Notes: generated from the letters alone by a model not told the origin. A DNA stretch of 64,000 bases from Hydrolagus colliei (GCA_035084275.1 JAYJKW010000100.1:1302001-1366000); one strand, 5' to 3'. Positions 6,208 through 59,089 are shown, numbered from the stretch's first letter. Made by a program: numbers and translations.

Positions 6208-6599
6208 TTATTGACATGCATTCACAGTGTCCATCAGGACAAGGGAAATGTTTACAAAACTTGGTTTACCGCTGGATTTGTTAACGGTTCTGGTCAAGGT
6301 CTTCAGTGCGAAGGTTTCATGTCCGACAATACAGGAGTATGAGAAGCCTCTACCCCACTCTCCAGCTGAGATGGTCAACATGCTGTACATGGAGTAGTTG
6401 CGATCTGCGCTATCTGCCATCAACTCAGTGTTCTTGTAGTTGCTGACATCTATCTCCTTGTCATCAACAGTCCATTGCACAAAGATCTCTTTGGGAGCGA
6501 AGTCCTTCACCAGGCAGGTGAGGGTGACAGACTGCTGAGCAGTCAATTCTGCTGCCGAGGGGAGGAGGATGTACACTGATGGTTGTTTTGTGTGGTCAA
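6208..6599 (-). CDS. ighm: Cmu4 exon plus secretory tailpiece
   Basis: cccacag|tt acceptor. C1-set motifs TLTCLVKDF, VQW, YSCIVGHE. Tail GKPSFVNISLVLMDTVNACQ* has an N-x-S sequon and a penultimate Cys. Internal donor G|gtaaac at 6270/6269 for TM splicing. Confidence 0.96.
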
Positions 6600-7034
6600 C
6601 TGTGGGACAAACACAATCAAATCAATACATTAACGTAATCAATCAAATAATACGTTCATGCGCAACATGCAGTTGAACAAATTGAGAATGTCTGTGTTCA
6701 GTGGTGTTTTCTGAAATTTCCTCATATAACTTTATTAGGTCCACCCAGAGAAAACTGGTTTAGGTGTTTCCAACTAAACTCATTGAGAACATTTCTCACA
6801 TTCTCCAAGAAAAATAATTTATTTATTTATTGTGGATATTATTCACTGAATAATAAGGTATTAAACTACTTATCAACTTATATAAAGATAGGTTTTCTGG
6901 CCTCTTTGATAGGCAACAAATCCACAGATAGATGGAAAGACAATACAGTCCAGAGACAGTTACTAATTGTTTTCACGATTATTTCCATTGTCTACATTCT
7001 AAAACCACGTATTTCCCCAAATCTAGCTCCATAC

Positions 7035-7343
7035 CTGTCCTCTGAAATATCTTTTCTCTGACAGGAGTTGGCATATCTTCGTGGCTGGCAACGCAGAAGA
7101 ACTCCTTCCCACTCTTCCAGTCTTCTGTAGAAACGTTTAATTCACTCATCACTTCATGACGCTCAGTGACAGATGGTTTCCCATATCCAGATAGTTGTTT
7201 CTCTCCTTGTGTCCAAGACACGTTGACATCAAGTGGTGCATTATCCACTACACAGGTCAGTGTTACAGAGGATTCCATCAACACCTGTTTTGGTGAAAGT
7301 GGAAGGAAATAGATCTTGACATTCCCAGTGGGATCCTCACAGT
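7035..7343 (-). CDS. ighm: Cmu3 exon
   Basis: ttttctag|ac acceptor and cag|gtatgg donor; 309 nt, phase 1/1. DCEDPTGNVKIYFLPLSPKQVLMESSVTLTCVV...VNVSW...EFFCVASHEDMPTP resembles shark Cmu3. Confidence 0.93.
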
Positions 7344-7676
7344 CTAGAAAAGGAAAAGAAAGTTTATTCACAAATATCAGCCAATAGGCATGTTTCGTAT
7401 TCGTTCAGGCTGATCAATAGTGTACACACACATTATCAGCTTCTGGATGAGATAAATACAGACTGTTGTTTACCAACGCAAGGATCGTTTGGTGTTGGAA
7501 TAATGTACTGGAAAAGACATGGTTATGGTTAGTCCTGACCCTATCCCTAGCGAATCTCAGAAGCCCTGCATGTTAATTGGCCGATTGATATCGCATATCC
7601 ATCGTCTGATAATGAACAAGTATTAAGCAAATACGTTCGATGAGTAGTACCTCAGCAGTGTGTGTCATCTGCATAC

Positions 7677-23995: not shown

Positions 23996-24045
23996 GTGAG
24001 TGTCCCCGCTGGCGGCGGCAGAGACACAGAGAGAGGAGAAGGTGA

Positions 24046-24381
24046 GAGCTGCCTGTGTACAGCCTGAGATACACAGAGAGAAGGTGGGAGCTGCCTGTGT
24101 ACAGCCTGAGATACACAGAGAGAAGGTGGGAGCTGCCTGTGTACAGCCTGAGATACACAGAGAGAAGGTGGGAGCTGCCTGTGTACAGCCTGAGATACAC
24201 AGAGAGAAGGTGGGAGCTGCCTGTGTACAGCCTGAGATACACAGAGAGAAGGTGGGAGCTGCCTGTGTACAGCCTGAGATACACAGAGAGAAGGTGGGAG
24301 CTGCCTGTGTACAGCCTGAGATACACAGAGAGAAGGTGGGAGCTGCCTGTGTACAGCCTGAGATACACAGAGAGAAGGTGG
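24046..24381 (+). repeat. 42-bp minisatellite, 8 copies
   Basis: Unit gagctgcctgtgtacagcctgagatacacagagagaaggtgg; 336 bp = 8 x 42. Confidence 0.95.
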
Positions 24382-25078
24382 GAGAGAGAGAGAGAGAGGG
24401 TGAGTCTGTGTGGCTGTGTGCATGGGTGTAGCTGTGTGTGTGTGTCTGTGTGTGTATGTGTGAATGGCTGTGTGTGTCTCTGTGTGTGTGTCCCTGACCC
24501 CCCTTGTTTCCCAGTAGGTGGTTCTGCTGTGAGGTTGAGTGTGGCTGCTGTGTGTGTGTGTTTGTGTGTGTGATAGAGAGTGTGTGTGTGTCTCTGTGAG
24601 AGTGTGTATGTGTGAGAGTGAGTGTGTTTGTGTGTGTGTGTGATAGAGAGTGTGTGTGTGTCTCTGTGAGAGTGTGTATGTGTGAGAGTGAGTGTGTTTG
24701 TGTATGTGTGTGAGAGAGAGTGTGTGTGTCTCTGTGTGTGTGTCCCTGACCCCCCTTGTTTCCCAGTAGGTGGTTCTGCTGTGAGGTTGAGTGTGGCTGC
24801 TGTGTGTGTGTGTTTGTGTGTGTGATAGAGAGTGTGTGTGTGTCTCTGTGAGAGTGTGTATGTGTGAGAGTGAGTGTGTTTGTGTGTGTGTGTGATAGAG
24901 AGTGTGTGTGTGTGTCTCTGTGAGAGTGTGTATGTGTGAGAGTGAGTGTGTTTGTGTATGTGTGTGAGAGAGAGTGTGTGTGTCTCTGTGAGAGTGTGTA
25001 TGTGTGAGAGTGAGTGTGTTTGTGTGTGTCTTACTAACCCCCCCCCCACCCTTGTCTCCCTGCACAGAGTCCTGGTCT

Positions 25079-25466
25079 NNNNNNNNNNNNNNNNNNNNNN
25101 NNNNNNNNNNNNNNNNNNNNNNNNNNNNNNNNNNNNNNNNNNNNNNNNNNNNNNNNNNNNNNNNNNNNNNNNNNNNNNNNNNNNNNNNNNNNNNNNNNNN
25201 NNNNNNNNNNNNNNNNNNNNNNNNNNNNNNNNNNNNNNNNNNNNNNNNNNNNNNNNNNNNNNNNNNNNNNNNNNNNNNNNNNNNNNNNNNNNNNNNNNNN
25301 NNNNNNNNNNNNNNNNNNNNNNNNNNNNNNNNNNNNNNNNNNNNNNNNNNNNNNNNNNNNNNNNNNNNNNNNNNNNNNNNNNNNNNNNNNNNNNNNNNNN
25401 NNNNNNNNNNNNNNNNNNNNNNNNNNNNNNNNNNNNNNNNNNNNNNNNNNNNNNNNNNNNNNNNNN
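25079..25466. other. Assembly gap (N run); further gaps at 43254-43384 and 45645-45778
   Basis: Runs of n in the sequence. Confidence 1.
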
Positions 25467-26048: not shown

Positions 26049-26221
26049 AAGTGTGAGTGTGTGTGTGTCTCTGTGAGAGTGTATATGTGAGTGTGAGTGT
26101 GTTTGTATGTTGCCTTCTTAACCACCCCTCCCCCTCCCCCCAACCCCTTGTCTTCCTATCAGACGGCTGGTGTGAGGGTGAGTGTGTCTGTTTGTGTGTC
26201 TTTGTCTCCGTGTGTGTCTCG

Positions 26222-26567
26222 CTGACCCCCCATTGTCTCCCTGACCCCCCATTGTCTCCCTGACCCCCCATTGTCTCCCTGACCCCCCATTGTCTCGCTG
26301 ACCCCCCATTGTCTCCCTGACCCCCCCATTGTCTCCCTGACCCCCCATTGTCTCCCTGACCCCCCATTGTCTCCCTGACCCCCCATTGTCTCCCTGACCC
26401 CCCATTGTCTCCCTGACCCCCCATTGTCTCCCTGACCCCCCATTGTCTCCCTGACCCCCCATTGTCTCCCTGACCCCCCATTGTCTCCCTGACCCCCCAT
26501 TGTCTCCCTGGCCCCCCATTGTCTCCCTGACCCCCCATTGTCTCCCTGACCCCCCATTGTCTCCCTG
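26222..26567 (+). repeat. 19-bp minisatellite, ~18 copies, forming the pyrimidine tract of the next exon
   Basis: Unit ctgaccccccattgtctcc; the last unit ends in ctccctgtag, the acceptor at 26570. Confidence 0.93.
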
Positions 26568-26646
26568 TAGGGGCTGCATTTGACCATATGTTTGGCTGGT
26601 AACACATCAGGTGTAAGTTTGTGCTGCTGACACAAGGCAGCAGAGA

Positions 26647-26701
26647 ATGTCTGAAGAAACCCAAGCCAGCAACATGGAGTGTGTGATTACCCCAGGGAAA
26701 G
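26647..26701 (+). CDS. First coding segment of the zinc-finger gene (exon 26571-26701)
   Basis: ATG with A at -3 and upstream in-frame stops. MSEETQASNMECVITPGK plus G, then a gtaacc donor in phase 1, in frame with the exon at 28305. Confidence 0.55.
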
Positions 26702-27109
26702 GTAACCACTCAATGTATCTGTACATTACTGTGTTTACTTATTGTTTAAATATTCAGTCTAACTTTATTGATAACTTGCTCTTGCATTGCTTGTATTTTG
26801 CCTACAATTATACAGTCAATTGACGCTATAGTATATTGTGTAAATTTCGACATGTCGATAAGATATGAAATGCATTAAATCAAATGCAAGGATTATGTAT
26901 ATTATCTGATATTTCACTTTTCACATCTTCTGGTTGTCACAAAACGCTTCACAGAATATACTGTAAAGCAAATGGACTGTATATTTGTGGACAAAACGCG
27001 ATATCAAATCGTGCCTAACAGTATCCCACAAACAGCAGTGGAATGAAATGATCAATTTATTACTGTTATGTTTTTTTAGCAATTATTGTAAGTAAATCTT
27101 CGAAGTAAG

Positions 27110-27660
27110 TAAACCTTTGTTTGTGGCAGGACAGCTAGATAAGGCTGTTAACACAGCATATGGGATACTAGACTTTATAAATAGTGGCATTGAGTACAAA
27201 GGTCAGGAAGCTTTAATTAACCTGCATTAAACATGGTTTAGGCCTCAGCTAGATTGCTGTGTTTTGATTCTGGGCATCAAACTTCAGGAAGGATATCAAG
27301 GACTTGGAAGAGGTGCAGAGGAAACTCACCCAGATGTTAGCAGGACTGGGGGACTTTGGTTAAGAGAAAAGTCCAGAAAGTCTAGGATTATTCTCATTCG
27401 AGGAGATAACATTACGAGGAGACCTGATAGAGGGTTTTTCCATGCAGCGAGTTTTTGGAATATTGAATGAATTTCCTGAAACTGTGTTGGGGGCTGATTT
27501 GGAAACAACACGAGGTGGGTAGTTATTTGGGAAGGACATGTTTTGCAGGGTAATGGGGAGAAATCCGGAGTGTCAGATTGACATTGATTAGTGATTTTCA
27601 AAGAGCCAGCACAGACTCAGTGTGCCAATATGCCTCACTTTAACTGGAATATTCTATGAT
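27110..27660 (+). mobile_element. CR1-clade LINE 3' fragment, decayed
   Basis: Degenerate RPQLxYCVxFW...FRKDIxxLExVQR coding region; homologous to 62740-63120. Confidence 0.75.
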
Positions 27661-27859
27661 ACTATAATTCTATTATTATTAGGCCTGTGAAGTGAGGAAA
27701 CTGAGAGAAATTTAACCAGGTTTCTCAGTTATAATATGAGTGCTCTAATTACAGAGCCACAGGATTTATTGGATATTGACTTATGCAATTAATTTGTATT
27801 GTACTTCACTTTTGCGCTTGATTATATGTTGCCCAGAAATAATAATATTTTATAATAAC

Positions 27860-28170
27860 GATATTCCTTGCATTTGATATAGCGCTTTTCCAATAATCTG
27901 GATGATTTAAACTGCTTTGCAGAATATACCGGACAGTGAATTGACTGTATATTTTACTGTCGAATCATGGAAGCCAACAAAAATAAAACAAAACATTTTT
28001 TGCAACCATTATTGGTTTAGGAAATCTATCAACCAGGTTCATATTGACTACTATGCAAACAGAGGACTGTGGAGTGAGGAAACTTGTCAAAGGATTTTTC
28101 CCTCCTGGGAATCAAGCCTGGGTTCTCTTGTGCAAGGCACTGTACAATTTGATTAGGAGCAACTTGATTT
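27860..28170 (-). mobile_element. DeuSINE-type copy, reverse orientation
   Basis: ccttgcatttgatatagcgctttt (reverse tail) and ggagtgaggaaactt...ggaatcaagcc (reverse head). Confidence 0.6.
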
Positions 28171-28304
28171 ACTTTCCACAAACTCTAACATCTCTCTGCC
28201 AAAAGTTGTCAGTGCTTTCTAGTCTCTGTGTACATCCTGTTTTCCAATTCCAATTCAGTTTTCCATTTCAGCTCTTTTCATTTTCTTATCAATTTACTCT
28301 ATAG

Positions 28305-28445
28305 AGCCCAGAATTGCAAAGAGTTTGAGCTCCAAACAGAATCAATTGACTGGAGAAGAGGCCGGGAGAAGCAGATACAATTTGAGAAAGAGGGAGAGAA
28401 GAAATAACACTGAGGACAAGGATCTTCATGACGAAGATAACCTAT
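28305..28445 (+). CDS. SSXRD-like exon (PRDM9/SSX repression-domain motif)
   Basis: Long pyrimidine tract with tatag| acceptor and t|gtaagt donor; 141 nt, phase 1/1. Ends RYNLRKRERRNNTEDKDLHDEDNL, which aligns without gaps to the recalled PRDM9 motif [23 protein letters not shown]. Confidence 0.7.
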
Positions 28446-29149
28446 GTAAGTGATAAATCAATCCGAGTTTCTAAGCATAAAATGGTCCAGTACAGCAACT
28501 ATACCTTAGCATTGACAAGGAGCTTTTAAGGTGAAGTTCCTCTGGTTTTTCAGACAGATGATAAGAATGCAACTGTTGGAATGAGTAACAACTTATAGAG
28601 TCCTCAAGACATCCTGGAGAACTTTGCAGGATTGTATTGTGAAGTGTTGCAGATTCCACAGTGATGACCCCCAAACAGCCATGAGGTGACAGACTAAATT
28701 TATCTTCGATACCGATAGACGGGACACTGCGGTGAGATCGAGTGAGAGAAACTCGCACTGCTTTGGAATCATTCCATCATAATTTTAATGTTTACCTGCA
28801 CAAAATGGCTGGAGAACTGGGTTAAAAATTTCACCAGAATTGCGGCAACTCAGAAAACGGAACACATTCCCCATATTAGTGTTAATTGCTATCAGTGTCC
28901 TGGCCAGGTATCCTCTTCACTAATTATTCATGTCTGTGTGTGAGAAGTTGCTGATTGTCAAATACTGACACTGACACTGACAAAACCTGACCTGCATGCA
29001 GGGGGCGCTTTATAAATGCAATGCAACACTGACCCACATTTTACAGTGGTTAGAGTAAAGCATTGACTTGGACAGGTATTGTAGAAATGTATTGATCACA
29101 CATCAATTGCCAAACAATGCACTCGCAAGTCTTTCTTGGTTTCCTTCAG

Positions 29150-32100
29150 CAGACAAAGTGGATGGTTCTGGAGCTACTTCTTGGCCTCAGTGGAACACTG
29201 TGTTTACTCGAGCTGAGTTTCATCAGAAGCACAGCAGAAGACATCCCGAGCTCCATCGAGACATATCAGGTGCAGTATCAGCCAGTCTGTTGTATCTGTT
29301 CTCAAAGCCGCAAACGTGTCAAGGATCCATCACATGTGCTGCTGAAGAAAAGAGCATCTCTCAGACAGGATCTCCACAGGATCACCAGCCATCGATCTCA
29401 GGAGAGAGACTGTATGATTGTTCCCAATGTGGGAAGAGCTGCACAAATTCAGGAGCCCTGCATAGACACCAGCGATCACATCCAGGGGAGAAACAATATA
29501 AATGTGCTGAATGTGGAAAGCGATTCACACGTTCGAATAATCTCAATGTTCACTATCGAACACACACAGGCGAGAGACCGTACAAATGTGTTGAATGTGG
29601 AAAGAGTTTCAAAACATCACGAGATGTCAAGAAACACCATCGATCACACACAGGAGAGAGACCATACAAATGTGCTGAATGTGGCAAGAGTTTCTCAAGT
29701 TCATGGCATCTCCAGGTTCACCATCGATCACACACAGGAGAGAGATCATATACATGTGATGAATGTGGCAAGAGTTTTAAGACATCAAGCGATATAAAAG
29801 TACACTATCGATCACACACGGGAGAGAGACCATACAAATGTGCTGAATGTGGAAAGAGTTTTAAAACATCTGGATATATGAAAATACACCATCGATCACA
29901 CACAGGAGAGAAACCATACAAATGTGCTGACTGTGGAAAGAGTTTCAAAACATCAGGAGAGGTCAAGAATCATCATCGATCACACACAGGAGAGAGACCA
30001 TATAAATGTGCTGAATGTGGAAAGAGTTTTAAAACATCTGGACATATGAAAATACACCATCGATCACACACAGGAGAAAAACCATACAAATGTGCTGACT
30101 GTGGAAAGAGTTTCAAAACATCACGAGAGGTCAAGAAACACCATCGATCACACACAGGAGAGAGACCAAAGAAATGTACTGAATGTGGAAAGAGTTTCAC
30201 TAGTTCATGGCATCTCCTGGTTCACCATCGATCACACACAGGAGAGAGACCATATACATGTGCTGCATGTGGCAAGAGTTTTAACACATCAGGCGATATA
30301 AAAGTACACTATCGATCACACACGGGAGAGAGACCATACAAATGTGCTGAATGTGGAAGGAGTTTTAAAACATCTGGATATCTGAAAATACACCATCGAT
30401 CACACACAGGAGAGAAACCATACAAATGTGCTGACTGTGGAAAGAGTTTCAAAACATCACGAGATGTCAAGAACCACCATCGATCACACACAGGAGAGAG
30501 ACCATACAAATGTGCTGAATGTGGCAACAGTTTCACAAGTTCATGGCATCTCCAGGTTCACCATCGATCACACACAGGAGAGAGATCATATACATGTGCT
30601 GAATGTGGCAAGAGTTTTATGACATCAAGCGATATAAAAGTACACTATCGATCACACACGGGAGAGAGACCATACAAATGTGCTGAATGTGGAAAGAGTT
30701 TTAAAACATCTGGACATATGAAAATACACCATCGATCACACACAGGAGAGAAACCATACAAATGTGCTGACTGTGGAAAGAGTTTCAAAACATCAGGAGA
30801 GGTCAAGAATCATCATCGATCACACACAGGAGAGAGACCATATAAATGTGCTGAATGTGGAAAGAGTTTTAAAACATCTGGACATATGAAAATACACCAT
30901 CGATCACACACAGGAGAGAAACCATACAAATGTGCTGACTGTGGAAAGAGTTTCAAAACATCACGAGAGGTCAAGAAACACCATCGATCACACACAGGAG
31001 AGAGATCATACAAATGCGCTGAATGTGGAAAGAGTTTCACAAGTTCATGCCATCTCCAGGTTCACCATCGATCACACACAGGAGAGAGACCATATACATG
31101 TGCTGCATGTGGCAAGAGTTTTAAGACATCAGGCGATATAAAAGTACACTATCGATCACACACGGGAGAGAGACCATACAAATGTGCTGAATGTGGAAGG
31201 AGTTTTAAAACATCCGGATATCTGAAAATACACCATCGATCACACACAGGAGAGAAACCATACAAATGTGCTGACTGTGGAAAGAGTTTCAAAACATCAC
31301 AAGATGTCAAGAACCACCATCGATCACACACAGGAGAGAGACCATACAAATGTGCTGAATGTGGCAAGAGTTTCACAAGTTCATGGCATCTCCAGGTTCA
31401 CCATCGATCACACACAGGAGAGAGATCATATACATGTGCTGAATGTGGCAAGAGTTTTATGACATCAAGCGATATAAAAGTACACTATCGATCACACACG
31501 GGAGAGAGACCATACAAATGTGCTGAATGTGGAAAGAGTTTTAAAACATCTGGACATATGAAAATACACCATCGATCACACACAGGAGAGAAACCATACA
31601 AATGTGCTGACTGTGGAAAGAGTTTCAAAACATCAGGAGAGGTCAAGAATCATCATCGATCACACACAGGAGAGAGACCATATAAATGTGCTGAATGTGG
31701 AAAGAGTTTTAAAACATCTGGACATATGAAAATACACCATCGATCACACACAGGAGAGAAACCATACAAATGTGCTGACTGTGGAAAGAGTTTCAAAACA
31801 TCACGAGAGGTCAAGAAACACCATCGATCACACACAGGAGAGAGATCATACAAATGCGCTGAATGTGGAAAGAGTTTCACAAGTTCATGCCATCTCCAGG
31901 TTCACCATCGATCACACACAGGAGAGAGACCATATACATGTGCTGCATGTGGCAAGAGTTTTAAGACATCAGGCGATATAAAAGTACACTATCGATCACA
32001 CACGGGAGAGAGACCATACAAATGTGCTGAATGTGGAAGGAGTTTTAAAACATCCGGATATCTGAAAATACACCATCGATCACACACAGGAGAGAAACCA

Positions 32101-32439
32101 TACAAATGTGCTGACTGTGGAAAGAGTTTCAAAACATCACAAGATGTCAAGAACCACCATCGATCACACACAGGAGAGAGACCATACAAATGTGCTGAAT
32201 GTGGCAAGAGTTTCACAAGTTCATGGCATCTCCAGGTTCACCATCGATCACACACAGGAGAAAGACCATATAAATGTGCTGACTGTGGCAAGAGTTTCAA
32301 AACATCAGGAGTGCTCCAGAAACACCATCGATCACACACGGGAGAGAGACCATATAAATGTGCTGAATGTGGAGTAAGATTTACAAGGAAACATAGCCTC
32401 CAACGTCACCAGAAAATGCACACACGAGACAAGGTATAA
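29150..32439 (+). CDS. Terminal exon encoding 36 tandem C2H2 zinc fingers (PRDM9-like minisatellite array)
   Basis: ttccttcag|cag| NAGNAG acceptor (29150 or 29153), both phase 1. Fingers start at 29413 with an exact 84-bp period and TGE(R/K)P linkers; stop at 32439. Confidence 0.93.
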
Positions 32440-34479
32440 ATGTGCGGATAGTGGAAAGCCTCTTTCATGGGCTGGTCAGCAGAAAAATCACAAACGCTCG
32501 AAGATGCCGTTATTACTTTAGAGCTTTCCATTTCAAACCACATCAAATGCTGCTTTGAGAAGTGATTATAGTAATAGTTTGATGGATAGTGTACAGTGAT
32601 CCACTTGATCTAATACCATTGACTCACAGTCTATTGTCATGGAACATCTTCCTGACGTTAAATGCGCCAAACAAATGTACTTGTGTGGTTTATGTAATGT
32701 TACCATAACTCATATTAAAGCCGTTGACATGGAATACATTACCATTTTCATTAGTTTCCTCATGTGAGGAATATAATGATAAAGCAAAGTAGAGATGAAC
32801 CTGAAGTGACTGTATAGAGGGATATAGAGGGATCTATAGCAGGACAGATACATTATTTTGACAAACAGTATGCTTAGATATAGGCCAAGGCAGACAGAGG
32901 GAGCCACAATTTTTACTGTATTTTCGATGCAAGAGCAACTCTGAGAGTCAGTTTGAGGACAAGATGGGAGGGCTGGAGGGAGACAGTGTGAGGACAAAGT
33001 GGGAGGGGCCTTCTTTCTCCCACCTTGTGGATGACACGCCATGTCCGAGGTACCAGGGCTGTCAGCAAGTCACCAGCTGAGGAGCCGGTGGGTTTTGGGG
33101 ACTGTCACCACACTGGGCCGTTTCCCAGCATTTTAAAGATGGTCCAGAGGAGCGGTGAGGACAAGGAGCGGTTACTGGGCTATTGTTTGTTGTTAATGTT
33201 TTTGTTATTTATTGCTGTTGTTTGATCCCCCCTCAACCCTTGCCCCCTGGCCTCCCCCCTCACCCTTTTGCTCTCCCCTTTTCCCCTCCTATCCCTCTTC
33301 TCCCTTCCCCCCTTCTCCCTTAATTTAAGTTCCCACCATCTTTCCCTCCCATTCCCCTTAACCCTCTTTCTCCCCCTTTTTCCTTTCTGATTTTACCTCA
33401 CCCTCGCCTCCCTCTCCCCCCTTATCCTCTTTTTCCCCTTTCTCCCCTGGCCCCAATTCCACCACTGCTTGTGGGGCACTGTTGTGCTCAATTTGGCTGC
33501 CGCATTTCTCCGACAAATAGTAAATTTTCCTTCTTTCCTTCCCCCAACAACATTCCCCGCCACCCTCCCTACCCCGCACCCCCTCCCTCTGCTCCCCCTC
33601 ACTCTGGTCCTGTCCTCTTCTCCCCACCTTCTTCCCTCATGTTTGCTCCCTACCCCCCACCTGCTCTGGTCCCAGGGACGTTATTGTATTCTGTGAAGCG
33701 TTTTGACACATCGATATGATGTGGAAAGTGTTATATAAATGTAAGGATTATCATTATTTTGCAACTGAATTAAATAATTTTATTGATTTACCGTAAATCA
33801 ATTCAAATGATGCCTGCTGGTGTTATGATAATGCTGCTGCAAAGCAATGCTTACCAAAGAACAACACAATTATATTTCTGTAGTGCGATTTACATCAGGA
33901 AATAAGGGAATAATTCAGCTGCTTGGAATGGAATTGGAATGGACGCATCAGAGTCACATCCATATTGAATTAAAAATGGAAAGTCCAATGACATATGCAG
34001 ATAGGACAGATGAACTCTATCGGAACATTATCATTATTATTTGCATTTGCTTGGAGAACGTAGGCCGATGTCCACCTAATTGGCCTTCACCACCTGCAAC
34101 TCGCTAGATATGTGATGGTGCAAATTATGCACTCGAAATATCTCGATATATCATCTTTTATTTAGCAGAAACTTATATAAGCTTTTCTTGCAATGAACTA
34201 TGCTATGTCTTCGTACTGTCTTCGTAGGCAGTTTATTCCACATTATTACTACACACTGCATTTAGTAGTGTAAAATGTTGTAAATAAAATGCAGCATTCT
34301 CAAATTAATGTTCAATTTTTTCTTGTTCTAACCTTTTCTGTTGACCCAACTCTTTTTATGAAATTTTCAATTTCCTCCACATTTTGTTGTATCTTGCTTG
34401 TTCCTTGTGAATGTACCTTTGTGTTCCTGATGTGACTTTGCCATGCTGGTATTGCCAGTCTCACTGTAATTTGGAGGAT

Positions 34480-43219: not shown

Positions 43220-46200
43220 CTCAGTCTCTCTCCGTGTCTCAATCTTTCTCTTTNNNNNNNNNNNNNNNNNNNNNNNNNNNNNNNNNNNNNNNNNNNNNNN
43301 NNNNNNNNNNNNNNNNNNNNNNNNNNNNNNNNNNNNNNNNNNNNNNNNNNNNNNNNNNNNNNNNNNNNNNNNNNNNNNNNNNNNTGTCTCAGTCTCTCAC
43401 TCTCTCTCTCTCTCTCTCTCTCCCCCCATCTTTCTCTATCAGTGTCTCAGCCTCTTTCTGTTTCTTAATTGAAACCAGATGTTGACGAGGAGGAAGGCAT
43501 GTGAGTCAAACAGGAGAGAGAGCGAGGGAGCTAGTGAGACACACCCTCAGATAAAGAACAGAGATTGAGAGGATCACACACATCCTTGAACTAACTCACA
43601 AAGAATATATACACAGAGAGAGAGAGAGGTGAGGATAATTTTATTTGTGTGTGTCTGAGTGTGTGAGAGACACAGAAAGCGTGTGTGTGTCTGCGTGTGT
43701 CTGTGTGTGAGAGCCAGAGAGAGACTGAGTGTATGTGTGTGTATGTCTGTGTATGTGAGAGACAGAGCGGGACTGAGTGTGTGTGTCTGTAAGTGTGAGA
43801 GACAGAGAGACTGAGACAGTGTGTGTGTATGTGTGTATGTGAGAGACTGAGAGAGACTGAGTATGTGTGTGTCTGTGAATGAGACGGAGAGACTGAGAGA
43901 GTGTGTGTGTGTCTGCCTGTGAGAGACAGAGTGTGTGTCTGTCTGTGTGTGAGAGTGTGACTGTGCAGCATGTGTGTCAGTGTGTGAATGGGGGCCTGTG
44001 GATTGCCAGAGAGAGAGAGAGAGAGGCCAGGGCTCTAACCCACTGAGCCACAGAGAGAGAGAGATTGAGAGTGCTTGTCTGTATGTGAGACACAGAGAGA
44101 CACTGAGAGAGTGTGTGTGTGAGAGACAGAGCGCGTGTCTGCGTGTGCGTCTGAGTGTGTGAGAGACTGAGAGACTGAGACACACATTATGTGTGTGTGT
44201 GTCTGTGTGTGTGAGAGACAGGGAGATTGAGACAGTGTGTGTGTGTGTCAGTGTGCATGAGAGACAGAGAGAGAGACTGAGAGTGTGTGTGTCTGTGTGT
44301 GATAGACGGAGAGAGAATGTGTATCTGTGTGTGTGAGAGAGAGACTGAGAGTGTGTGTCTGTGTGTGAGAGACAGAGAGAGACTGAGAGAGTGTGTGTGT
44401 GTCAGTGAGTGAGAGACAGGGACAGTTTGGGTGTGTGTGTGTGTGTCTGTGAGTGCGTCTGAGTGTGTGAGAGACTAAGTGAGTGTGTGTGAGAGACTGA
44501 GAGCGGGACTGAGAGTGTGTGTGTGTCTGTATGTGTGAGATACAGAGAGCGGGACTGAGAGGTGACTATGGGTGAGAGACAGAGAGACTGAGACTGTGTG
44601 TGTGTGTGTCTGTGTGTATGAGAGACATAGAGAGAGAGACTGAGAGTTTGTGTGACTGTGTGTGAGACGGAGAGACTGAGAGAGTGTGTGTGTGTGTCTG
44701 CCTGTGAGAGACAGAGTGTGTGTCTGTGTATGTGAGTGTGTCTGTGCGTGCATGTGTGTCAGTGTGTGTATGGGGGCCTGGGGCTTGCGAGAGAGAGAGA
44801 GAGGCCAGGGCTCTAACCCACTGAGCCACACAGAGAGTCAGAGAGAGAGACTGAGACACAGAGAGAGAATGAGAGAGGAGTCTGGACAAACACAGAGTCA
44901 GAGAGAGAGAGAGGTGGGAGGGTTAACGACATACAGACACACACTCTCCGACCACAAATCTTCTCGTTAACAGGAAGTTAATGTGACTCGTAGGCAAGGA
45001 GTCTTGAGAACCATTTCACTCCCCCACCTCTTTCTGTCTGTCTGTCACTGTGTCTCAGTGACTCATTCACTCTCAGTCTGTGTCTCTCTATGTGTCTCTC
45101 TGAGTCTCCCTCTGTCTCTCTCTCTCTTTCTCTGTCAGTCTCTCTCTCTCTCTGTGTCTCAGTCTCTCTCCCAGTCTCTCTCTGTGTTTCAGTCTCTCTG
45201 TCTCAGTCTCTCTCCCTCTGTGTCCCAGTCTCTCTCTGTGTGTGTTTCTCTTTCTCTTTGTCTCAGTCTCTCTCCCCCTCGGTCTCTCTCTCTGTCTCAG
45301 TCTCTCTCCCTGTGTCTCAGTCTCTTTCTGTCTGTTTGTGTATCTCTTAGTCTCTCTCCCTCTCAATCTCTCTGTCTGTCAGTCCCTCTCTGTCTCAGTC
45401 TCTCTCCCTCTGTGTCTCAGTCTCTCCCTCTCTGTTTGTGTGTGTGTCTCAGTCTCTCTCTCTCCCCATCTCTCTCTGTCAGTGTCTCAGCCTCTTTCTG
45501 TCTCTTATTTGAAACCAGATGTTGATGAGGAGGAAGGCATATGTGTCAAACAGGAGACAGAGCGAGGGAGCGAGAGATAGGGAGAGTGAGACACACCCTC
45601 AGATAAAAAAAACAGAAGTTGAGAGGAACACACACATCCTTGACNNNNNNNNNNNNNNNNNNNNNNNNNNNNNNNNNNNNNNNNNNNNNNNNNNNNNNNN
45701 NNNNNNNNNNNNNNNNNNNNNNNNNNNNNNNNNNNNNNNNNNNNNNNNNNNNNNNNNNNNNNNNNNNNNNNNNNNNNNCACTGAGAGTGTCTGCCTGTGA
45801 GAGACTGAGTGTGTGTCTGTGTATGTGAGTGTATCTGTGTATGTGAGTGTATCTGTGTATGTGAGTGTGTCTGTGCGTGCATGTGTGTGAGTGTGTGTGT
45901 GAATGGGGGCCTGTGGATTGCGAGAGAGAGAGAGAGAGAGGCCACGGCTCTAACCCACTGAGAGAGAGACTGAGTGTGTGTGTGTGTCTGTGTGTGAGAG
46001 AGAGACTGAGAGTGTTTGTCTGTGTGTGAGACACAGGCAGAGACTGAGAGAGTGTGCGTTGCTGTGTGTGAGAGACAGAGCGTGTGTGTCTGTGTGTGCG
46101 TCTGAGTGTGTGAGAGACTGAGACACACATTATGTTTATGTCTGTGTGTGTGAGAGACAGAGAGACTTAGACAGTGTCTGTTTGTCTTTGTGTATGAGAG

Positions 46201-47965: not shown

Positions 47966-48948
47966 ATGCCCGTGCGATCCACCACCACCACCGTCACTAC
48001 AACCACCTACTCCTCCTCCTCCTCCTTCCCCTCCACCTTCCTCGCCTCCTCCTCTCGCCAGCGCGCAGTCCTCCTGGCTCGCACCGTGGCCTGCATTCTG
48101 TCCTGCGCTGCCTTCAGCCTCTCCCTTGACCGCGGTCTGGCGAGGCAGCCCGGGGGCGTTTCCATCTGGTGTTTGTTCTCCTGGGGCTGGTCGATCTGCC
48201 TCTCCCTCCTCTTCCTGGTGTGTGGGCTGCCCTCCCTCACCCCCCAGGCCTCCTCCGCCAGCCCCTGCCCGTCCTCCCCGCGGGGGTGGGGATGTAACGG
48301 GAACCTGCCCGCGGCCGCGCCCTCCTGTGCCTCTCGGCCTCCGCCGCCTTCCCCGCGCACTTCCTGGTTTCCTTCCCGGCCTGGGAGGGGGGCTGGATCA
48401 CGGCCCTCTCGTGTCTGGCCTGCGCGGCCTTCTGCGCGTATGTCTGGCTGCTGCGCGCGGCTCCCGGGCAGCCCGGTGCGTACATGTCCACCGTGCCCGG
48501 CTGGCTGAAAGTCTGCCAGACCTTCCTGGGCTGCGCGCTGCTGGCGTTCGCCTCCGGCCTGCGTTACCGGGGCCGCGCGGCGCTGAGCTGGTGTGTGGCC
48601 GTGTACGCGCTCTGCCTCCTGGCCTCCCTGGTCGCGACCTTGTGGTCGTCCTGCGTCTCCCTCCGCCCGCGTCCCCCGGAGAAGTGCCTGTCTCTCACCG
48701 CGATCCTGTGCTGCGCCATGTACGCCACGGCTACGGTCCTCTGGCCCCTGTACTCCTTCTCGGGGGAGCTGGGAGGCCTGGGTGGGGGTCGCCCGGCTCA
48801 CTGCGGGAGGGCGAGAGGGACAGGACTTCACTGCGACTGGGATACCAGCGTCCTCGTCTCCGTCCTCACCGCCCTCAACCTCCTGCTGTATATGGGAGAT
48901 GTGGTGTACAGCTCCAGGTTCGTCTACATCACCACCCCCACCTCATAA
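47966..48948 (+). pseudogene. myadm: MYADM-like double-MARVEL protein, intronless, with one frameshift near 48300-48320 (pseudogene or sequence error)
   Basis: MPVRSTTTTVTTTT start matches the MYADM N-terminus. After a frame change: ALLCLSAS...YMSTVPGWLKV...WCVAVYA...LWPLY...LTALNLLLY, matching MYADM; TAA at 48946-48. Confidence 0.8.
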
Positions 48949-52744: not shown

Positions 52745-53395
52745 TCAACAACAACAACAAAAAATTACATTTATGGAGCGCCTTTCACGTCGGGATGACG
52801 TCCCATGGCGCTGAACAGGAGGCGTGTGACCCGAGCCGGGAGGGGAGTGTTTTTGAAGGGGTGAAACACGAAGGGGAGGTAAAAGAGTTCGGGGTGGAAC
52901 AAAAGGCACGATCGAAGAGGAAAGTCTTCAAACCGGCCTTGAAAGAGGAAAGGGAAGAGACGAAACGGAGGGATTGAGGGATGGCATTCGATAAGGTGGG
53001 AGCGGAGAAACTGAAGGCCCGGCCTCCGATGGTGGGGCGGTTCGGGCGGGGGGCTTGGAGCAGGCCAAGTCCTGTTGAACGGAGGGTCCGGGTGGGCGTG
53101 TAGGTGGAGAGTAGATCGGTTACGTAGGATGGGGCAAGGCCGTGTAAGGCCTTGTAGGTGAGGACGATGATCCTAAACTCGATCCTCTGGAGGATGGGGA
53201 GCCAGTGGAGACGGGCGAGGGTGGGGGTTATGTGGTCGCGGAGGCGGGTGCGGGATAGTACACGGGCTGCAGAAGTTTGGATGGCCTGCAGCCTATGAAT
53301 GGAGGAACTGGGGAGGCCGACAACGAGAGAATTTCCGTAGTCCAGTCGTGAGGTGATGTATGCATGCAACATCCGTATCAAAATGATGCTGCCTG
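52745..53395 (-). mobile_element. L2-clade LINE 3' end
   Basis: ORF2 C-terminus TSRLDYGNSL...LQAIQTSAAR...HITP.L..LHWLP...IEF...YKALHGLAP, 3' tail gtgaaaggcgct and (TTG)n end. Confidence 0.92.
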
Positions 53396-53667
53396 TTGCT
53401 CCCATTGATCCACTCTCAGATCATCCGATCTTGGGTTTTGAAGCCACTTGTTAGAACACAGGTTTCCCAACAAACAACATAATTGTTCTTTGTTATTCAT
53501 CTCTACAGATGTATTTCCCCTAACACGGGACAAATATTATTTGTGTACGAATTTGACTGCTGCTGTCCTAGTTACAGTGTCCTGGAGTCCTGCAGCTCAG
53601 TGGTTAGAGTATTTGCCTTTCAAGCTTAGAGACCGGGGTTCAATTCGCAGCAGGGGAACTCCTTAGG

Positions 53668-54030
53668 TATGAAAATAAGGATTACGAGCATGGGTAGGCC
53701 ATTCGACCCTTCGAGCCTGCTCCGCCATTCAATAAGTTCATGGCTGATCTTATTACGTAACTCTGATAACCTGCCCTATCCCTATATCCCAAATTCCCTC
53801 TATTCTTCAAAAATATTTCAGTCTCAGCCTTGAAAATGTTCAAGGACTGAGCATCTACAGCCTTCTGGGTTAGTGAATTCCATACGTTTGCTACCCTCTG
53901 AGTGAAGAAATGTTTCCTCAACTCTGTTGTAAAAGGGTGACCCTTAATTTTAAGTCTGTGAACCCTGGTTACAGATTCTCGTACGACGGGAAGCAATCCC
54001 TCAGTGTCTACTTCATCTCGGTAAAGTTTC
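53668..54030 (-). mobile_element. CR1-clade LINE 3' end
   Basis: HRLKIKGHPFTTELRKHFFTQRVANVWNSL...SLNIFK plus the 3' hairpin ggccattcgacccttcgagcctgctcc. Confidence 0.92.
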
Positions 54031-54336
54031 TTATCCTGCATACTTGGCAATAATACATGAAGAAGAAAACAATAATTCGGACACTTTGAACAACAACTGT
54101 TTGTGGTACACCACAACCCTACATCACCGCAATACTCTTTTCCCCCACCACTACAGTCCATGGCGGTCTCCAGTAGCTCTCTATCACTCAAACGATATAA
54201 TTGATGATATTCATTCTCTAACACTGGTGATTAGTCTGGTTACTCTCCTCCAGTAAAAAATATATCACTGTCAGATACACGGTCACAGCTGTGAGACCCA
54301 GCTTTGCCCGAGTGTGATTTAATTGGAATGGCATAC

Positions 54337-58091: not shown

Positions 58092-58996
58092 CTAAGTGGT
58101 GTTATGCGAGTGGACCAGTAAGCGAGTGATGGGATAAGTGAAGATGAATATGAGCTGTTGCCTGAATTTGGTCTGAGTCACACCATAGATGAAAGTGTTA
58201 CAGCAGGAGCTCAGGTGCTGTAACATGTAACCCACCTCCTCAGCGATGGTGAAAGGGCTGCTGTAGTCAGCCTCCAGGATCTTGGACTCTGTCACCATCG
58301 CAAAGATGAAAGTGACCATGTAGGTGAGGCAAAGCAACACAAAGCTGCCCGAGATGGTAAAGAGCAAGATTATAGATTTCCGTCGACTCTCCATCTCCTC
58401 GTCCCTCCCTATCGCAGCCCCCCGCAGACCTTGGCGTACCCTGCTGGCCACTATCACATGCCTGATGGTCAGCGTGTTCAAGACGAGGATGAGGATGAAG
58501 GGAAGAAGTGGATTTGCAAAAATTTCGAACCAGGTAAAGAACCTCCAGAGGGGAGAGGTGTAAACAATAGGTTTGACGGAGCAGTAACTGGGCTGCCCAT
58601 TGACTACCAGCCGTGGTTCAAACATGAAGTATATGGGGATATTCTCCAAGCACAGACCTGCACAGGTTGCCCAGATCACCAGATCCGCTGTCGTCGACGT
58701 GCAGTACTTGGTTTTGAGCTTTGGGCAGCAGATAGCAGTGAAACGGTCGAAGGTGAAGGCCATGGTCAGCCAGACAGAGATATCAGTAAAAATAAAGCAA
58801 AGCATCAAGTGCAGGCGACAAATATCTGTTTGATATATGGGTGAATACGGAATGTAAATATAAATTGTCTCGTACAGGATCACATCAAAAACCATGACCA
58901 GCAGATCAGCAACAGCCATTGCGACCAGGTAGCGGGTGACGCATTTGGAGAGTCCAAACATTCCTTCCACCAGGACCACAATAGTCAATGTGATGG
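58092..58996 (-). CDS. GPR139/GPR142-like class A GPCR, exon 2
   Basis: cattcag|cc acceptor, phase 1. Contains GLSKCVTRYLVAMAVADLLV, SVWLTMAFTFDRFTAICC, RRKSIILLFTISGSF and SSCCNTFIYGVTQTKFR; no stops. Confidence 0.92.
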
Positions 58997-59089
58997 CTGA
59001 ATGAAAGGCCGAAACACAATTATACATTTCACTGGGAATGTGAGCTGCTCTGGCTTATGCTTTATTGTGACTTACAGTGTACTAGTTGA

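What the first reader, a model, noticed from the sequence alone, without database searches (positions are those of the whole stretch)
26571..32439. PRDM9-derived zinc-finger gene that keeps SSXRD but has no PR/SET (and no visible KRAB)
Seen: a fully in-frame three-exon model, 26647-26701 + 28305-28445 + 29150-32439, all phase 1. The middle exon ends YNLRKRERRNNTEDKDLHDEDNL at a phase-1 donor. Established (recalled): PRDM9 has KRAB-SSXRD-PR/SET-ZF order, its SSXRD exon ends ...EPQDDDYL at a phase-1 intron, and its last exon starts in phase 1 with a solitary finger, a spacer and an 84-bp minisatellite array. The 704-nt intron here shows no PR/SET sequence. Inference: the SET exons were removed as a frame-neutral block, leaving a methyltransferase-less SSXRD-ZF protein. 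It could compete with PRDM9 for sites, or represent a cartilaginous-fish repressor family paralleling the KRAB-ZNF origin from PRDM9. Two conserved Tyr of the motif read Asn, so the SSXRD may be drifting.
Basis: partly seen in the sequence, partly recalled or inferred. Interest (0 to 1): 0.85.

Follow-up and report, generated by a model that had tools for sequence, protein, structure and literature searches.

The report
SET-less zinc-finger gene with SSXRD-like exon
An intact 36-finger zinc-finger gene has a short upstream exon that resembles, in sequence and exon structure, the SSXRD exon of the recombination gene PRDM9, but it has no methyltransferase or KRAB part; the resemblance is suggestive, not proven.

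Summary
The three-exon model (26647-26701, 28305-28445, 29150-32439) translates cleanly into 1161 aa with GT/AG at every junction and phase 1 throughout. No KRAB or PR/SET sequence exists in any frame of the assembled 64 kb.

The recalled PRDM9 gene structure also checks out on real macaque, hamster, cat and catfish loci. The SSXRD exon is phase 1-to-1 and ends DDDYL plus T before gtaagtg. The three SET exons total 534 nt, so removing them keeps the frame. The last exon is entered in phase 1.

Homology of exon 2 to SSXRD remains only suggestive:
- **For:** its last 23 residues are the single best match to the SSXRD among 50,186 six-frame 23-mers of the window, in the same register at the exon end. 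Block-preserving shuffles give p of about 3e-4.
- **Against:** Pfam gives no hit, a mammalian SSXRD HMM scores 3 bits, BLASTP gives E=0.13 and hhalign gives 7% probability.
- **Missing:** database searches with the N-terminal 152 residues and the exon-3 linker found no relatives; exon 2 alone was searched only against Pfam and PDB. Expression is untested.

The exon-3 "spacer" is three decayed fingers, not a PRDM9-style solitary finger. Verdict: partly supported, about 45% that this is a PRDM9 derivative.

The parts
26647..26701 (+). Proposed exon 1: ATG plus 18 codons (MSEETQASNMECVITPGK), ending in phase 1 at the donor AAG|gtaacc
   Evidence: translation, junctions; the in-frame TAA at 26614-26616 blocks any N-terminal extension within this exon unless a weak acceptor at 26637-26646 is used; the donor ranks 12th of 256, and this is one of only 4 ATG-first-exon candidates ending in phase 1. 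There is no homologue and no transcript evidence.
28305..28445 (+). Proposed exon 2: 141 nt, phase 1 to 1, charged and low in complexity. An alternative, stronger acceptor at 28272 would add 11 hydrophobic residues in frame.
   Evidence: The frame closes with a stop 2 codons after the donor. Pfam gives no family at E<=10.
28376..28444 (+). SSXRD-like 23-residue motif YNLRKRERRNNTEDKDLHDEDNL at the very end of exon 2, followed by the split-codon base T and gtaagtga
   Evidence: It aligns without gaps to the primate PRDM9 sequence [23 protein letters not shown] (8/23 identical, 13/23 positive; BLASTP E=0.13). It is the best 23-mer of the window. Block-shuffle p=2-5e-4; hhalign P=0.005. The exon-end position, phase and last base T match the PRDM9 loci.
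28446..29149 (+). Intron 2 (704 nt), with no SET or zinc-knuckle remnant
   Evidence: The SET HMM's best hit anywhere in the window is 3.0 bits, while it scores 1e-44 on catfish SET exons. tblastn finds nothing.
29150..32439 (+). Exon 3: strong acceptor (tctttcttggtttccttcag|), 9 residues, 3 decayed fingers, 36 intact C2H2 fingers, then TAA
   Evidence: Pfam zf-C2H2 and zf-H2C2_2 give E down to 1e-33.
29176..29412 (+). Decayed fingers (residues 75-153): a W-x2-W...H-x3-H finger with both Cys replaced by Trp (75-97), a degenerate middle unit, and a decayed finger in register with the array (126-153)
   Evidence: The array HMM and a generic C2H2 HMM weakly recognise residues 84-98 and 128-152. 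tblastn aligns residues 105-152 to intact fingers of horn-shark and catfish genes.
29665..32184 (+). Three tandem copies of a 10-finger, 840-bp higher-order repeat (29665-30504, 30505-31344, 31345-32184)
   Evidence: Identity at a lag of 10 fingers is 0.94-1.0. Copies 2 and 3 differ at 1 nt; copies 1 and 2 differ at 17 nt, in 16 codons (12 nonsynonymous, 4 synonymous). TRF reports periods of 84 and 168.
32714..32719 (+). First AATAAA/ATTAAA-type poly(A) signal after the stop codon
25079..25466 (.). Assembly gap (388 N) 1.2 kb upstream of exon 1. It could hide a small exon.

Best explanation
This is an intact multi-exon C2H2 poly-zinc-finger gene with two short 5' coding exons and one 3.3-kb exon. 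That exon holds 36 good fingers, preceded by three decayed ones.

The exon just before the finger exon is most likely a diverged copy of the PRDM9-type SSXRD exon. On that reading the gene derives from a PRDM9 paralogue. It lost the 534-nt zinc-knuckle/PR-SET exon block, a loss that keeps the frame, and it lost or replaced the KRAB exons.

The predicted product binds DNA through a long, recently expanded finger array and cannot methylate histones. Its only non-finger feature is a basic L-R-x-R cluster followed by an acidic D-E-D-x-L tail. This could serve as a protein-interaction or repression motif like SSXRD, or simply as a nuclear localisation signal.

**Shown:** the reading frame, the splice signals, the finger array, the absence of SET and KRAB, and the match to PRDM9 exon structure.

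**Inferred:** homology of exon 2 to SSXRD, descent from PRDM9, expression, and any function of the motif.
For: - **Gene model.** The frame and junctions are clean. Exon 3 needs an upstream start codon. The exon-3 acceptor ranks 2nd of 217, and very few compatible upstream exons exist.
- **Motif similarity.** The exon-2 tail is the only one of 50,186 six-frame 23-mers in the window that scores >=34 against the PRDM9 SSXRD; the next best scores 24. A 66-kb horn-shark ZNF cluster reaches only 24.
- **Shuffle tests.** Anchored shuffles give p=1e-5 and block-preserving shuffles give p=2-5e-4.
- **Register.** BLASTP of exon 2 against a whole primate PRDM9 places its best HSP exactly on SSXRD residues 181-203, in the register where both exon ends coincide. 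hhalign chooses the same 23 columns, P=0.005.
- **Gene structure.** In macaque, hamster, cat and catfish PRDM9-family genes this exon is phase 1-to-1 and ends (D)DYL + T|gtaag. The window reads DEDNL + T|gtaagtga. The PRDM9 SET block is a 534-nt phase 1-to-1 unit, and the last exon is entered in phase 1.
- **Weight of the missing Pfam hit.** The literature says SSXRD detection by profile is unreliable. Some true PRDM9 orthologues need E thresholds of 1000 (PMC8892340), and whale-shark PRDM9 SSXRD scored E=103 (PMC5519329, supplement).
- **Precedents.** Domain-losing PRDM9 derivatives are known: SSX and the coelacanth aKRAB-ZNFs (PMC8835667).
Against: - No conventional homology test is significant: no Pfam SSXRD hit at E<=10, 3.2 bits with a mammalian SSXRD HMM and not the top hit in the window, BLASTP E=0.13, hhalign probability 7%, and no PDB match.
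- The central Tyr, the S-E-P triplet and the last Tyr of the motif are all changed.
- A comparable score of 34 arises in an unrelated ranid-frog KZNF linker, so charged linkers can reach this level by chance.
- The donor phase of exon 2 is not independent evidence, because any exon spliced to a phase-1 acceptor must end in phase 1.
- No relative of the N-terminal 152 residues or of the exon-3 linker was found in the protein collections. The model itself is not on record.
- The start of exon 3 is decayed fingers, not a PRDM9-like solitary finger plus spacer.
- No shark PRDM9 sequence could be obtained for a direct comparison (one search returned mammals and catfish only).
- Expression and splicing are untested, and there is no CpG island at exon 1.
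Confidence: 0.45

Rival explanations
1. This is an ordinary lineage-specific poly-zinc-finger gene with no relation to PRDM9. Its short charged upstream exon (basic cluster plus acidic tail, for example a nuclear localisation signal) resembles SSXRD by chance and by composition. The phase-1 entry into the finger exon would then be a coincidence or a general feature of finger genes (phase-1 usage in ordinary ZNF genes was not tested here).
For: - No profile or pairwise test reaches significance.
- A frog KZNF linker with no known link to SSXRD reaches the same score of 34.
- The finger region matches generic ZNFs of many vertebrates at about 50% identity, with no PRDM9-specific signal.
- The exon-3 leader is decayed fingers.
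- No KRAB or SET is present.
- No paralogues carry the same N-terminus.
- The finding was picked by eye from a scan, so a look-elsewhere effect applies.
Against: - The motif is a 5.7-SD outlier in the window and sits exactly at the exon end, in the same register, phase and last base as in PRDM9 genes.
- Block-preserving shuffles that keep the basic and acidic halves still give p=2-5e-4.
Confidence: 0.38
2. The three-exon model is wrong or the locus is not a working gene. Either the finger exon is served by different upstream exons (in the gap, further upstream, or with acceptor 28272), or it is an unexpressed or decaying array. Part of the 840-bp triplication might also be an assembly artefact.
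For: - There is no transcript evidence, no CpG island or recognisable promoter, and a 19-bp minisatellite lies directly upstream of exon 1.
- A 388-N gap lies 1.2 kb upstream.
- Alternative first exons and an alternative acceptor exist.
- HOR copies 1 and 2 differ by 12 nonsynonymous against 4 synonymous changes, roughly neutral.
- Copies 2 and 3 differ by 1 nt in 840.
- The exact 1161-aa product is not in the protein collection.
Against: - A 1126-codon open frame with all 36 sets of zinc ligands intact cannot be a long-dead pseudogene.
- The exon-3 acceptor is strong, and only three compatible internal exons exist, two of which share the donor at 28445.
Confidence: 0.12
3. This is a true, complete PRDM9 paralogue whose KRAB and SET exons are simply missing from the assembly or lie outside the window.
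For: A gap exists at 25079-25466. PRDM9 duplicates are reported in cartilaginous fish (PMC5519329).
Against: - Intron 2 is fully assembled (704 nt, no N) and lies exactly where the SET exons would be.
- No SET or KRAB signal is found in 64 kb on either strand.
- An in-frame TAA lies 31 nt upstream of the ATG.
Confidence: 0.05

Closest known systems
PRDM9 (KRAB - SSXRD - PR/SET - C2H2 array), the vertebrate recombination-hotspot gene
   Same: - A short phase 1-to-1 exon ends in an acidic D-x-D-x-L motif plus a split-codon T before gtaagtg.
- An L-R-x-R basic core lies 20 residues upstream of that motif.
- The whole finger array sits in one last exon entered in phase 1.
- The array is built of 84-bp units, with variation concentrated on the recognition helix: 39% of amino-acid diversity falls at positions -1, 2, 3 and 6.
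   Different: - There is no PR/SET, zinc knuckle or KRAB.
- The SSXRD-like motif fails profile thresholds and has lost both Tyr residues and the S-E-P triplet.
- The units are only about 81% identical and are organised as a 10-finger higher-order repeat.
- The exon-3 leader is decayed fingers rather than a solitary finger plus spacer.
SSX family (aKRAB + SSXRD), a mammalian PRDM9 derivative
   Same: It is a precedent for a PRDM9-derived gene that keeps SSXRD and has lost SET (PMC8835667). It shares the layout of a basic L-R-x-R core followed by an acidic tail.
   Different: - SSX proteins have KRAB and no fingers; this gene has fingers and no KRAB.
- The SSX residues needed for nucleosome acidic-patch binding (W164 and the first R of RLR) are absent here, as they are in PRDM9. 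PRDM9 peptides did not bind nucleosomes (PMC7714695).
Coelacanth aKRAB-ZNFs and tetrapod KRAB-ZNFs
   Same: They are PRDM9-related finger genes without SET, expanded and fast-evolving, with the finger array in one exon (PMC8835667).
   Different: They keep KRAB and have lost SSXRD, which is the opposite combination. No KRAB is found here, and no gene family was found around this gene.
Truncated PRDM9 paralogues (teleost PRDM9-beta, cnidarian XSZ/SZ/S variants)
   Same: They show domain loss in PRDM9 duplicates. The catfish PRDM9-beta gene still ends the equivalent exon in ...DDYL + T|gtaag, in phase 1.
   Different: All described truncations remove terminal domains and keep SET (PMC5519329; bioRxiv 10.64898/2026.09.07.749791). 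Here the internal SET block would be the part that is lost.
Effector-less poly-C2H2 genes of sharks (for example Heterodontus and Carcharodon 'zinc finger protein 850-like')
   Same: They have long tandem C2H2 arrays and no KRAB, and their fingers are about 40-48% identical to those here.
   Different: Their loci and products show nothing resembling exon 1, exon 2 or the SSXRD motif.

Membership tests
PRDM9 / PRDM7 family | PR/SET methyltransferase domain | tested here: not met
   A SET HMM built from 96 PRDM9-family sequences scores at most 3.0 bits in the six-frame window, against 1e-44 on the catfish control. tblastn is negative and Pfam is negative.
PRDM9 / PRDM7 family | N-terminal ancestral KRAB domain | tested here: not met
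   KRAB HMMs (PRDM9-only, and PRDM9 plus KZNF) give only noise (i-E >= 0.58), against 1e-21 to 1e-29 on the macaque control. They were not validated on a shark KRAB, and the 388-N gap is unsearchable.
PRDM9 / PRDM7 family | SSXRD exon: short, phase 1-to-1, ending ...DDDYL plus 1 nt, directly upstream of the next coding block | tested here: met
   Exon 2 is phase 1-to-1 and ends DEDNL + T|gtaagtga. Macaque, hamster and cat end DDDYL + T|gtaagtg, and catfish ends DDYL + T|gtaaga.
PRDM9 / PRDM7 family | Finger array in a single last exon entered in phase 1 | tested here: met
   This feature may not be specific to PRDM9; phase usage in ordinary ZNF genes was not tested here.
SSXRD motif (Pfam PF09514) | Significant match to the family profile | tested here: not met
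   No Pfam family at E<=10 for exon 2 or for the N-terminal 291 aa. A mammalian SSXRD HMM gives 3.2 bits. hhalign gives P=0.005 and probability 7%. The published caveat is that this profile misses true fish SSXRDs (PMC8892340, PMC5519329).
SSXRD motif (Pfam PF09514) | Conserved residues: L-R-E-R-K core, central Tyr, S-[ED]-P, acidic D/E run | tested here: inconclusive
   L-R-x-R and the acidic run with terminal Leu are kept. The central Tyr (now Asn), S-E-P (now K-D-L) and the last Tyr (now Asn) are lost.
C2H2 poly-zinc-finger proteins | Tandem C-x2-C-x12-H-x3-H fingers with TGE(K/R)P linkers | tested here: met
   There are 36 fingers at 28-aa spacing. Pfam zf-H2C2_2 gives 2.5e-33 and zf-C2H2 gives 3.6e-29 on the first five fingers.
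KRAB zinc-finger proteins | KRAB A box upstream of the array | tested here: not met

The most novel reading that the evidence does not exclude
This would be a previously undescribed kind of PRDM9 derivative: an 'X-Z' gene that keeps only the SSXRD exon and a finger array, made by frame-neutral internal loss of the methyltransferase exons. It would give cartilaginous fish a catalytically dead, PRDM9-like DNA binder. That would be a third route from PRDM9 to new gene types, beside SSX (K-X) and KRAB-ZNFs (K-Z), and possibly the seed of a lineage-specific family.
Probability: 0.35. Interest if true: 0.7.

Novelty: new variant of a known kind. Interest (0 to 1): 0.45.

Why it matters
PRDM9 is the source of two other gene types. 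SSX keeps KRAB and SSXRD, and the KRAB zinc-finger genes keep KRAB and the fingers. All described truncated PRDM9 copies lose terminal domains and keep SET.

A gene keeping SSXRD plus fingers without SET or KRAB would show that the internal catalytic block can be dropped cleanly, because its exons form a phase 1-to-1 unit. It would also give a natural separation-of-function allele for asking what SSXRD does when tethered to DNA without methyltransferase activity. In addition, published PRDM9 surveys start from SET or KRAB, so by design they could not have found such genes.

If the resemblance is chance, the locus is just one more fast-evolving shark zinc-finger gene.

Tried and rejected
**Searches that found nothing**
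The contiguous 86-aa exon-3 linker was searched instead and gave 0 hits.
- A word-indexed search with N-terminal residues 1-152 gave 0 hits among proteins of 314-1000 aa.
- A search including the first fingers gave only generic ZNFs at about 50% identity. It found no self protein and no close paralogue.
- An exact look-up of the 1161-aa model and of the neighbouring GPCR found neither in the collection.
- PDB phmmer with exon 2 gave nothing.

**No shark PRDM9 could be obtained**
- The PRDM9 query returned 120 mammalian and catfish clusters.
- The supplements of Baker et al. hold no sequences.
- As a result, the most informative comparison could not be made.

**Loci that could not be read**
- The mouse PRDM9 locus was not on record.
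- Two shark ZNF loci were too long to fetch.

**Corrections and rejected readings**
- My first SET HMM was contaminated with fingers, because the regex YC.xC also matches fingers. It was rebuilt from PRDM9-family proteins only.
- The idea that the W-x2-W finger equals PRDM9's solitary finger ZF1 was rejected. The whole leader aligns to ordinary fingers as three decayed units.
- Nucleosome acidic-patch binding as the motif's function was rejected as a firm claim. PRDM9-type peptides lacking W164 and R167 do not bind (PMC7714695).
- The frog KZNF linker that scores as high as exon 2 was examined and judged a compositional match, not an SSXRD.

Full report
**1. What is in the sequence**

Joining 26647-26701, 28305-28445 and 29150-32439 gives 3486 nt that translate without a stop into 1161 residues. 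There is an ATG start with A at -3. The donors are AAG|gtaacc and TAT|gtaagt, the acceptors are ...ctctatag| and ...tttccttcag|, and both introns are phase 1.

The last exon is open for 1126 codons and has no in-frame Met before the sixth finger, so at least one upstream coding exon is required.

The exon-3 acceptor ranks 2nd of 217 AGs between the gap and exon 3. The exon-2 donor ranks 7th of 256 GTs. Only three phase 1-to-1 internal exon candidates exist, and two of them share the donor at 28445. The alternative acceptor at 28272 is stronger and would add 11 hydrophobic residues. Only four ATG-containing first exons ending in phase 1 exist.

An in-frame TAA at 26614-26616 lies 31 nt upstream of the ATG. 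This argues against an upstream KRAB-coding exon feeding into this frame. There is no CpG island, and a poly(A) signal lies 275 nt after the stop.

The model is therefore sound and among very few possible, but it has no transcript support.

**2. The finger exon**

There are 36 C2H2 fingers at exact 28-residue spacing, all with intact ligands. Pfam recognises only zinc-finger families.

The 84-bp units are on average 82% identical. The array is three copies of a 10-finger, 840-bp higher-order unit. Copies 2 and 3 differ at one base. Copies 1 and 2 differ at 17 bases in 16 codons, 12 nonsynonymous and 4 synonymous, which is roughly neutral. Positions -1, 2, 3 and 6 carry 39% of the amino-acid diversity.

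The 86 residues before the first good finger are not a spacer. Residues 126-153 are a decayed finger in register with the array. Residues 105-152 align to intact fingers of other fish. Residues 75-97 are a finger in which both Cys read Trp.

**3. No KRAB, no SET**

tblastn with the non-finger parts of mammalian, catfish and mollusc PRDM9-family proteins finds only noise outside the array.

Local HMMs gave the same answer. The SET HMM reaches at most 3.0 bits in the six-frame window but scores 1e-44 on catfish SET exons. The KRAB HMMs give i-E >= 0.58 in the window but 1e-21 to 1e-29 on the macaque KRAB exon.

**4. The recalled PRDM9 gene structure is correct**

I fetched real loci for macaque, hamster and cat PRDM9/7 and a catfish PRDM9-beta-like gene. 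I mapped their exons by exact spliced matching.

- The SSXRD exon is 102 nt, phase 1-to-1, and ends ...GATGATGACTACCTCT|gtaagtg, that is DDDYL plus T.
- The next three exons (zinc knuckle and PR/SET) are 272+68+194 = 534 nt and run from phase 1 to phase 1.
- The last exon is entered in phase 1 and begins with the solitary finger.
- The catfish gene ends its equivalent exon in DDYL plus T|gtaaga.
- The window's exon 2 ends GACGAAGATAACCTAT|gtaagtga, that is DEDNL plus T.

One caution applies. Once exon 3 is phase 1, the donor phase of exon 2 is forced, so it is not independent evidence. The independent coincidences are the phase of exon 3, the 5' phase of exon 2, and the motif ending exactly at the exon end.

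**5. Is exon 2 an SSXRD?**

Conventional tests say no or are silent:
- Pfam gives no family at E<=10.
- PDB phmmer finds nothing.
- A 75-sequence mammalian SSXRD HMM gives 3.2 bits, and exon 2 is not the top hit of the window.
- hhalign gives P=0.005 and probability 7%.
- BLASTP against a whole primate PRDM9 gives E=0.13.

In every one of these alignments, however, the chosen register is the same. YNLRKRERRNNTEDKDLHDEDNL aligns over [23 protein letters not shown] with 8/23 identical and 13/23 positive. The best BLASTP HSP in the 859-residue PRDM9 falls exactly on the SSXRD.

Scored without gaps by BLOSUM62, this 23-mer (score 34) is the only one of 50,186 six-frame 23-mers in the window to reach that score. 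The next best is 24, and the mean is -23 with SD 10. A 66-kb horn-shark ZNF cluster reaches only 24.

Shuffling exon 2 gives p=1e-5 for the anchored alignment. Shuffling within the basic and acidic halves separately still gives 2-5e-4.

Against this, 193,000 residues of unrelated ZNF proteins contain one independent family that also reaches 34, a ranid-frog KZNF linker reading GNLRDSKVEVKEEIKEEDDEDGV. Charged linkers can therefore do this by composition.

Published work warns that SSXRD is too short for reliable profile detection. True PRDM9 orthologues sometimes need E thresholds of 1000 (PMC8892340), and whale shark scored E=103 (PMC5519329 supplement). The missing Pfam hit is therefore weak evidence against.

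I put the chance of true homology near one half.

**6. Relatives**

None were found:
- The N-terminal 152 residues have no match among proteins of 314-1000 aa.
- The exon-3 linker has no match in 1.84 billion representatives.
- The finger region matches generic ZNFs at about 50% identity.
- The exact model is not in the collection.
- The horn-shark ZNF cluster has nothing like exons 1 or 2.

No shark PRDM9 could be retrieved, so the most telling comparison is still open. The idea of a cartilaginous-fish family has no support so far.

**7. How it most likely works**

*Shown:* a long, intact, recently expanded DNA-binding array, and no catalytic or KRAB domain.

*Inferred:* the product is a sequence-specific DNA binder. 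Its only other feature is a basic cluster (LRKRERR) followed by an acidic tail.

In SSX this kind of region represses transcription and binds the nucleosome acidic patch. That binding needs W164 and the first Arg of RLR, which PRDM9 lacks, and PRDM9 peptides did not bind nucleosomes (PMC7714695). The window's motif reads NLR, like PRDM9's SLR. I therefore do not claim nucleosome binding. A protein-interaction motif or a nuclear localisation signal are equally plausible.

Competition with PRDM9 for sites is pure speculation.

**8. Comparison with what is known, and novelty**

Known PRDM9 derivatives are SSX (KRAB+SSXRD), the coelacanth and tetrapod KRAB-ZNFs (KRAB+fingers; PMC8835667), and terminally truncated paralogues that keep SET (PMC5519329; bioRxiv 10.64898/2026.09.07.749791).

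An SSXRD-plus-fingers gene with the internal SET block removed is not among them. If real, it is a new variant of a known kind. It cannot be filed as a PRDM9 family member, because SET and KRAB were tested and not met.

**9. Verdict**

| Explanation | Confidence |
|---|---|
| PRDM9-derived SET-less finger gene | 0.45 |
| Ordinary finger gene with a chance resemblance | 0.38 |
| Wrong model, or not a working gene | 0.12 |
| Complete PRDM9 with exons missing from the assembly | 0.05 |

Interest: 0.45.

Noticed in passing
window 6208-7371 (- strand), probably extending to about 8300: There are two immunoglobulin C1-set exons (Pfam 1.3e-21 and 2.2e-10). The downstream one ends in a secretory-tail-like sequence (...GKPSFVNISLVLMDTVNACQ), so it looks like an IgM-type heavy-chain constant region. 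The zinc-finger gene therefore lies next to an Ig heavy-chain cluster, which fits a cartilaginous fish.
   Followed up: partly
window 29665-32184: The finger array is a triplicated 840-bp (10-finger) higher-order repeat. Copies 2 and 3 differ by a single base. This is either a very recent duplication or an assembly expansion. Copies 1 and 2 differ by 12 nonsynonymous and 4 synonymous changes.
   Followed up: yes
window 29176-29244: This is a degenerate zinc finger in which both zinc-binding Cys read Trp (W-P-Q-W...H-x3-H). Each is one base away from a Cys codon. It is followed by two further decayed fingers up to 29412.
   Followed up: partly
window 28272 versus 28305: Two in-frame acceptors lie 33 nt apart for exon 2. 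The upstream one scores higher with a crude PWM and would add the hydrophobic stretch LFIFLSIYSI.
   Followed up: partly
window 26215-26567 and 24036-24384: A 19-bp minisatellite (TGTCTCCCTGACCCCCCAT, 18.5 copies) ends 80 nt before the proposed start codon and supplies a pyrimidine tract plus AG at 26569-26570. A 42-bp repeat (8.3 copies, 99% matches) lies 2 kb further upstream.
   Followed up: no
window 22-26 kb and 37-52 kb: These are very long tracts of TC/TG-rich simple sequence. They produce many spurious ORFs of 120-530 codons rich in S, L, H and T on both strands. Three assembly gaps lie in such sequence (25079-25466, 43254-43384, 45645-45778).
   Followed up: no
window 48484-48948 (+): An ORF in a GC-rich island has a sub-threshold MARVEL membrane-domain match (E=4.2e-6, 27 bits against a cut-off of 32.8).
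   Followed up: partly
window 58092-59027 (-): This is an intronless 311-residue rhodopsin-family GPCR ORF (Pfam 7tm_1, 8e-18). Its exact sequence is not in the protein collection.
   Followed up: partly
window 27100-27560 (intron 1); 52785-54224 (-): These stretches read by eye like LINE reverse-transcriptase remnants. Pfam gave no hit for the two ORFs at 52785-54224; the intron-1 stretch was not searched. One alternative ATG first-exon candidate (27442-27514) lies inside the intron-1 fragment.
   Followed up: partly
P0063, P0033, P0091, P0069 (ranid frog KRAB-ZNF proteins): A repeated linker module ...HHHQSGNLRDSKVEVKEEIKEEDDEDGV... scores as high against the PRDM9 SSXRD as the window's exon 2 does. 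I judged it compositional. It may be worth a look, because amphibian KZNFs descend from a PRDM9-like ancestor.
   Followed up: partly
L002 (catfish PRDM9-beta-like gene, Tachysurus vachellii): A gene classed as lacking SSXRD still has a phase 1-to-1 exon ending ...KPRHDDYL + T|gtaaga at the SSXRD position. The exon and its acidic end outlast the recognisable motif.
   Followed up: partly
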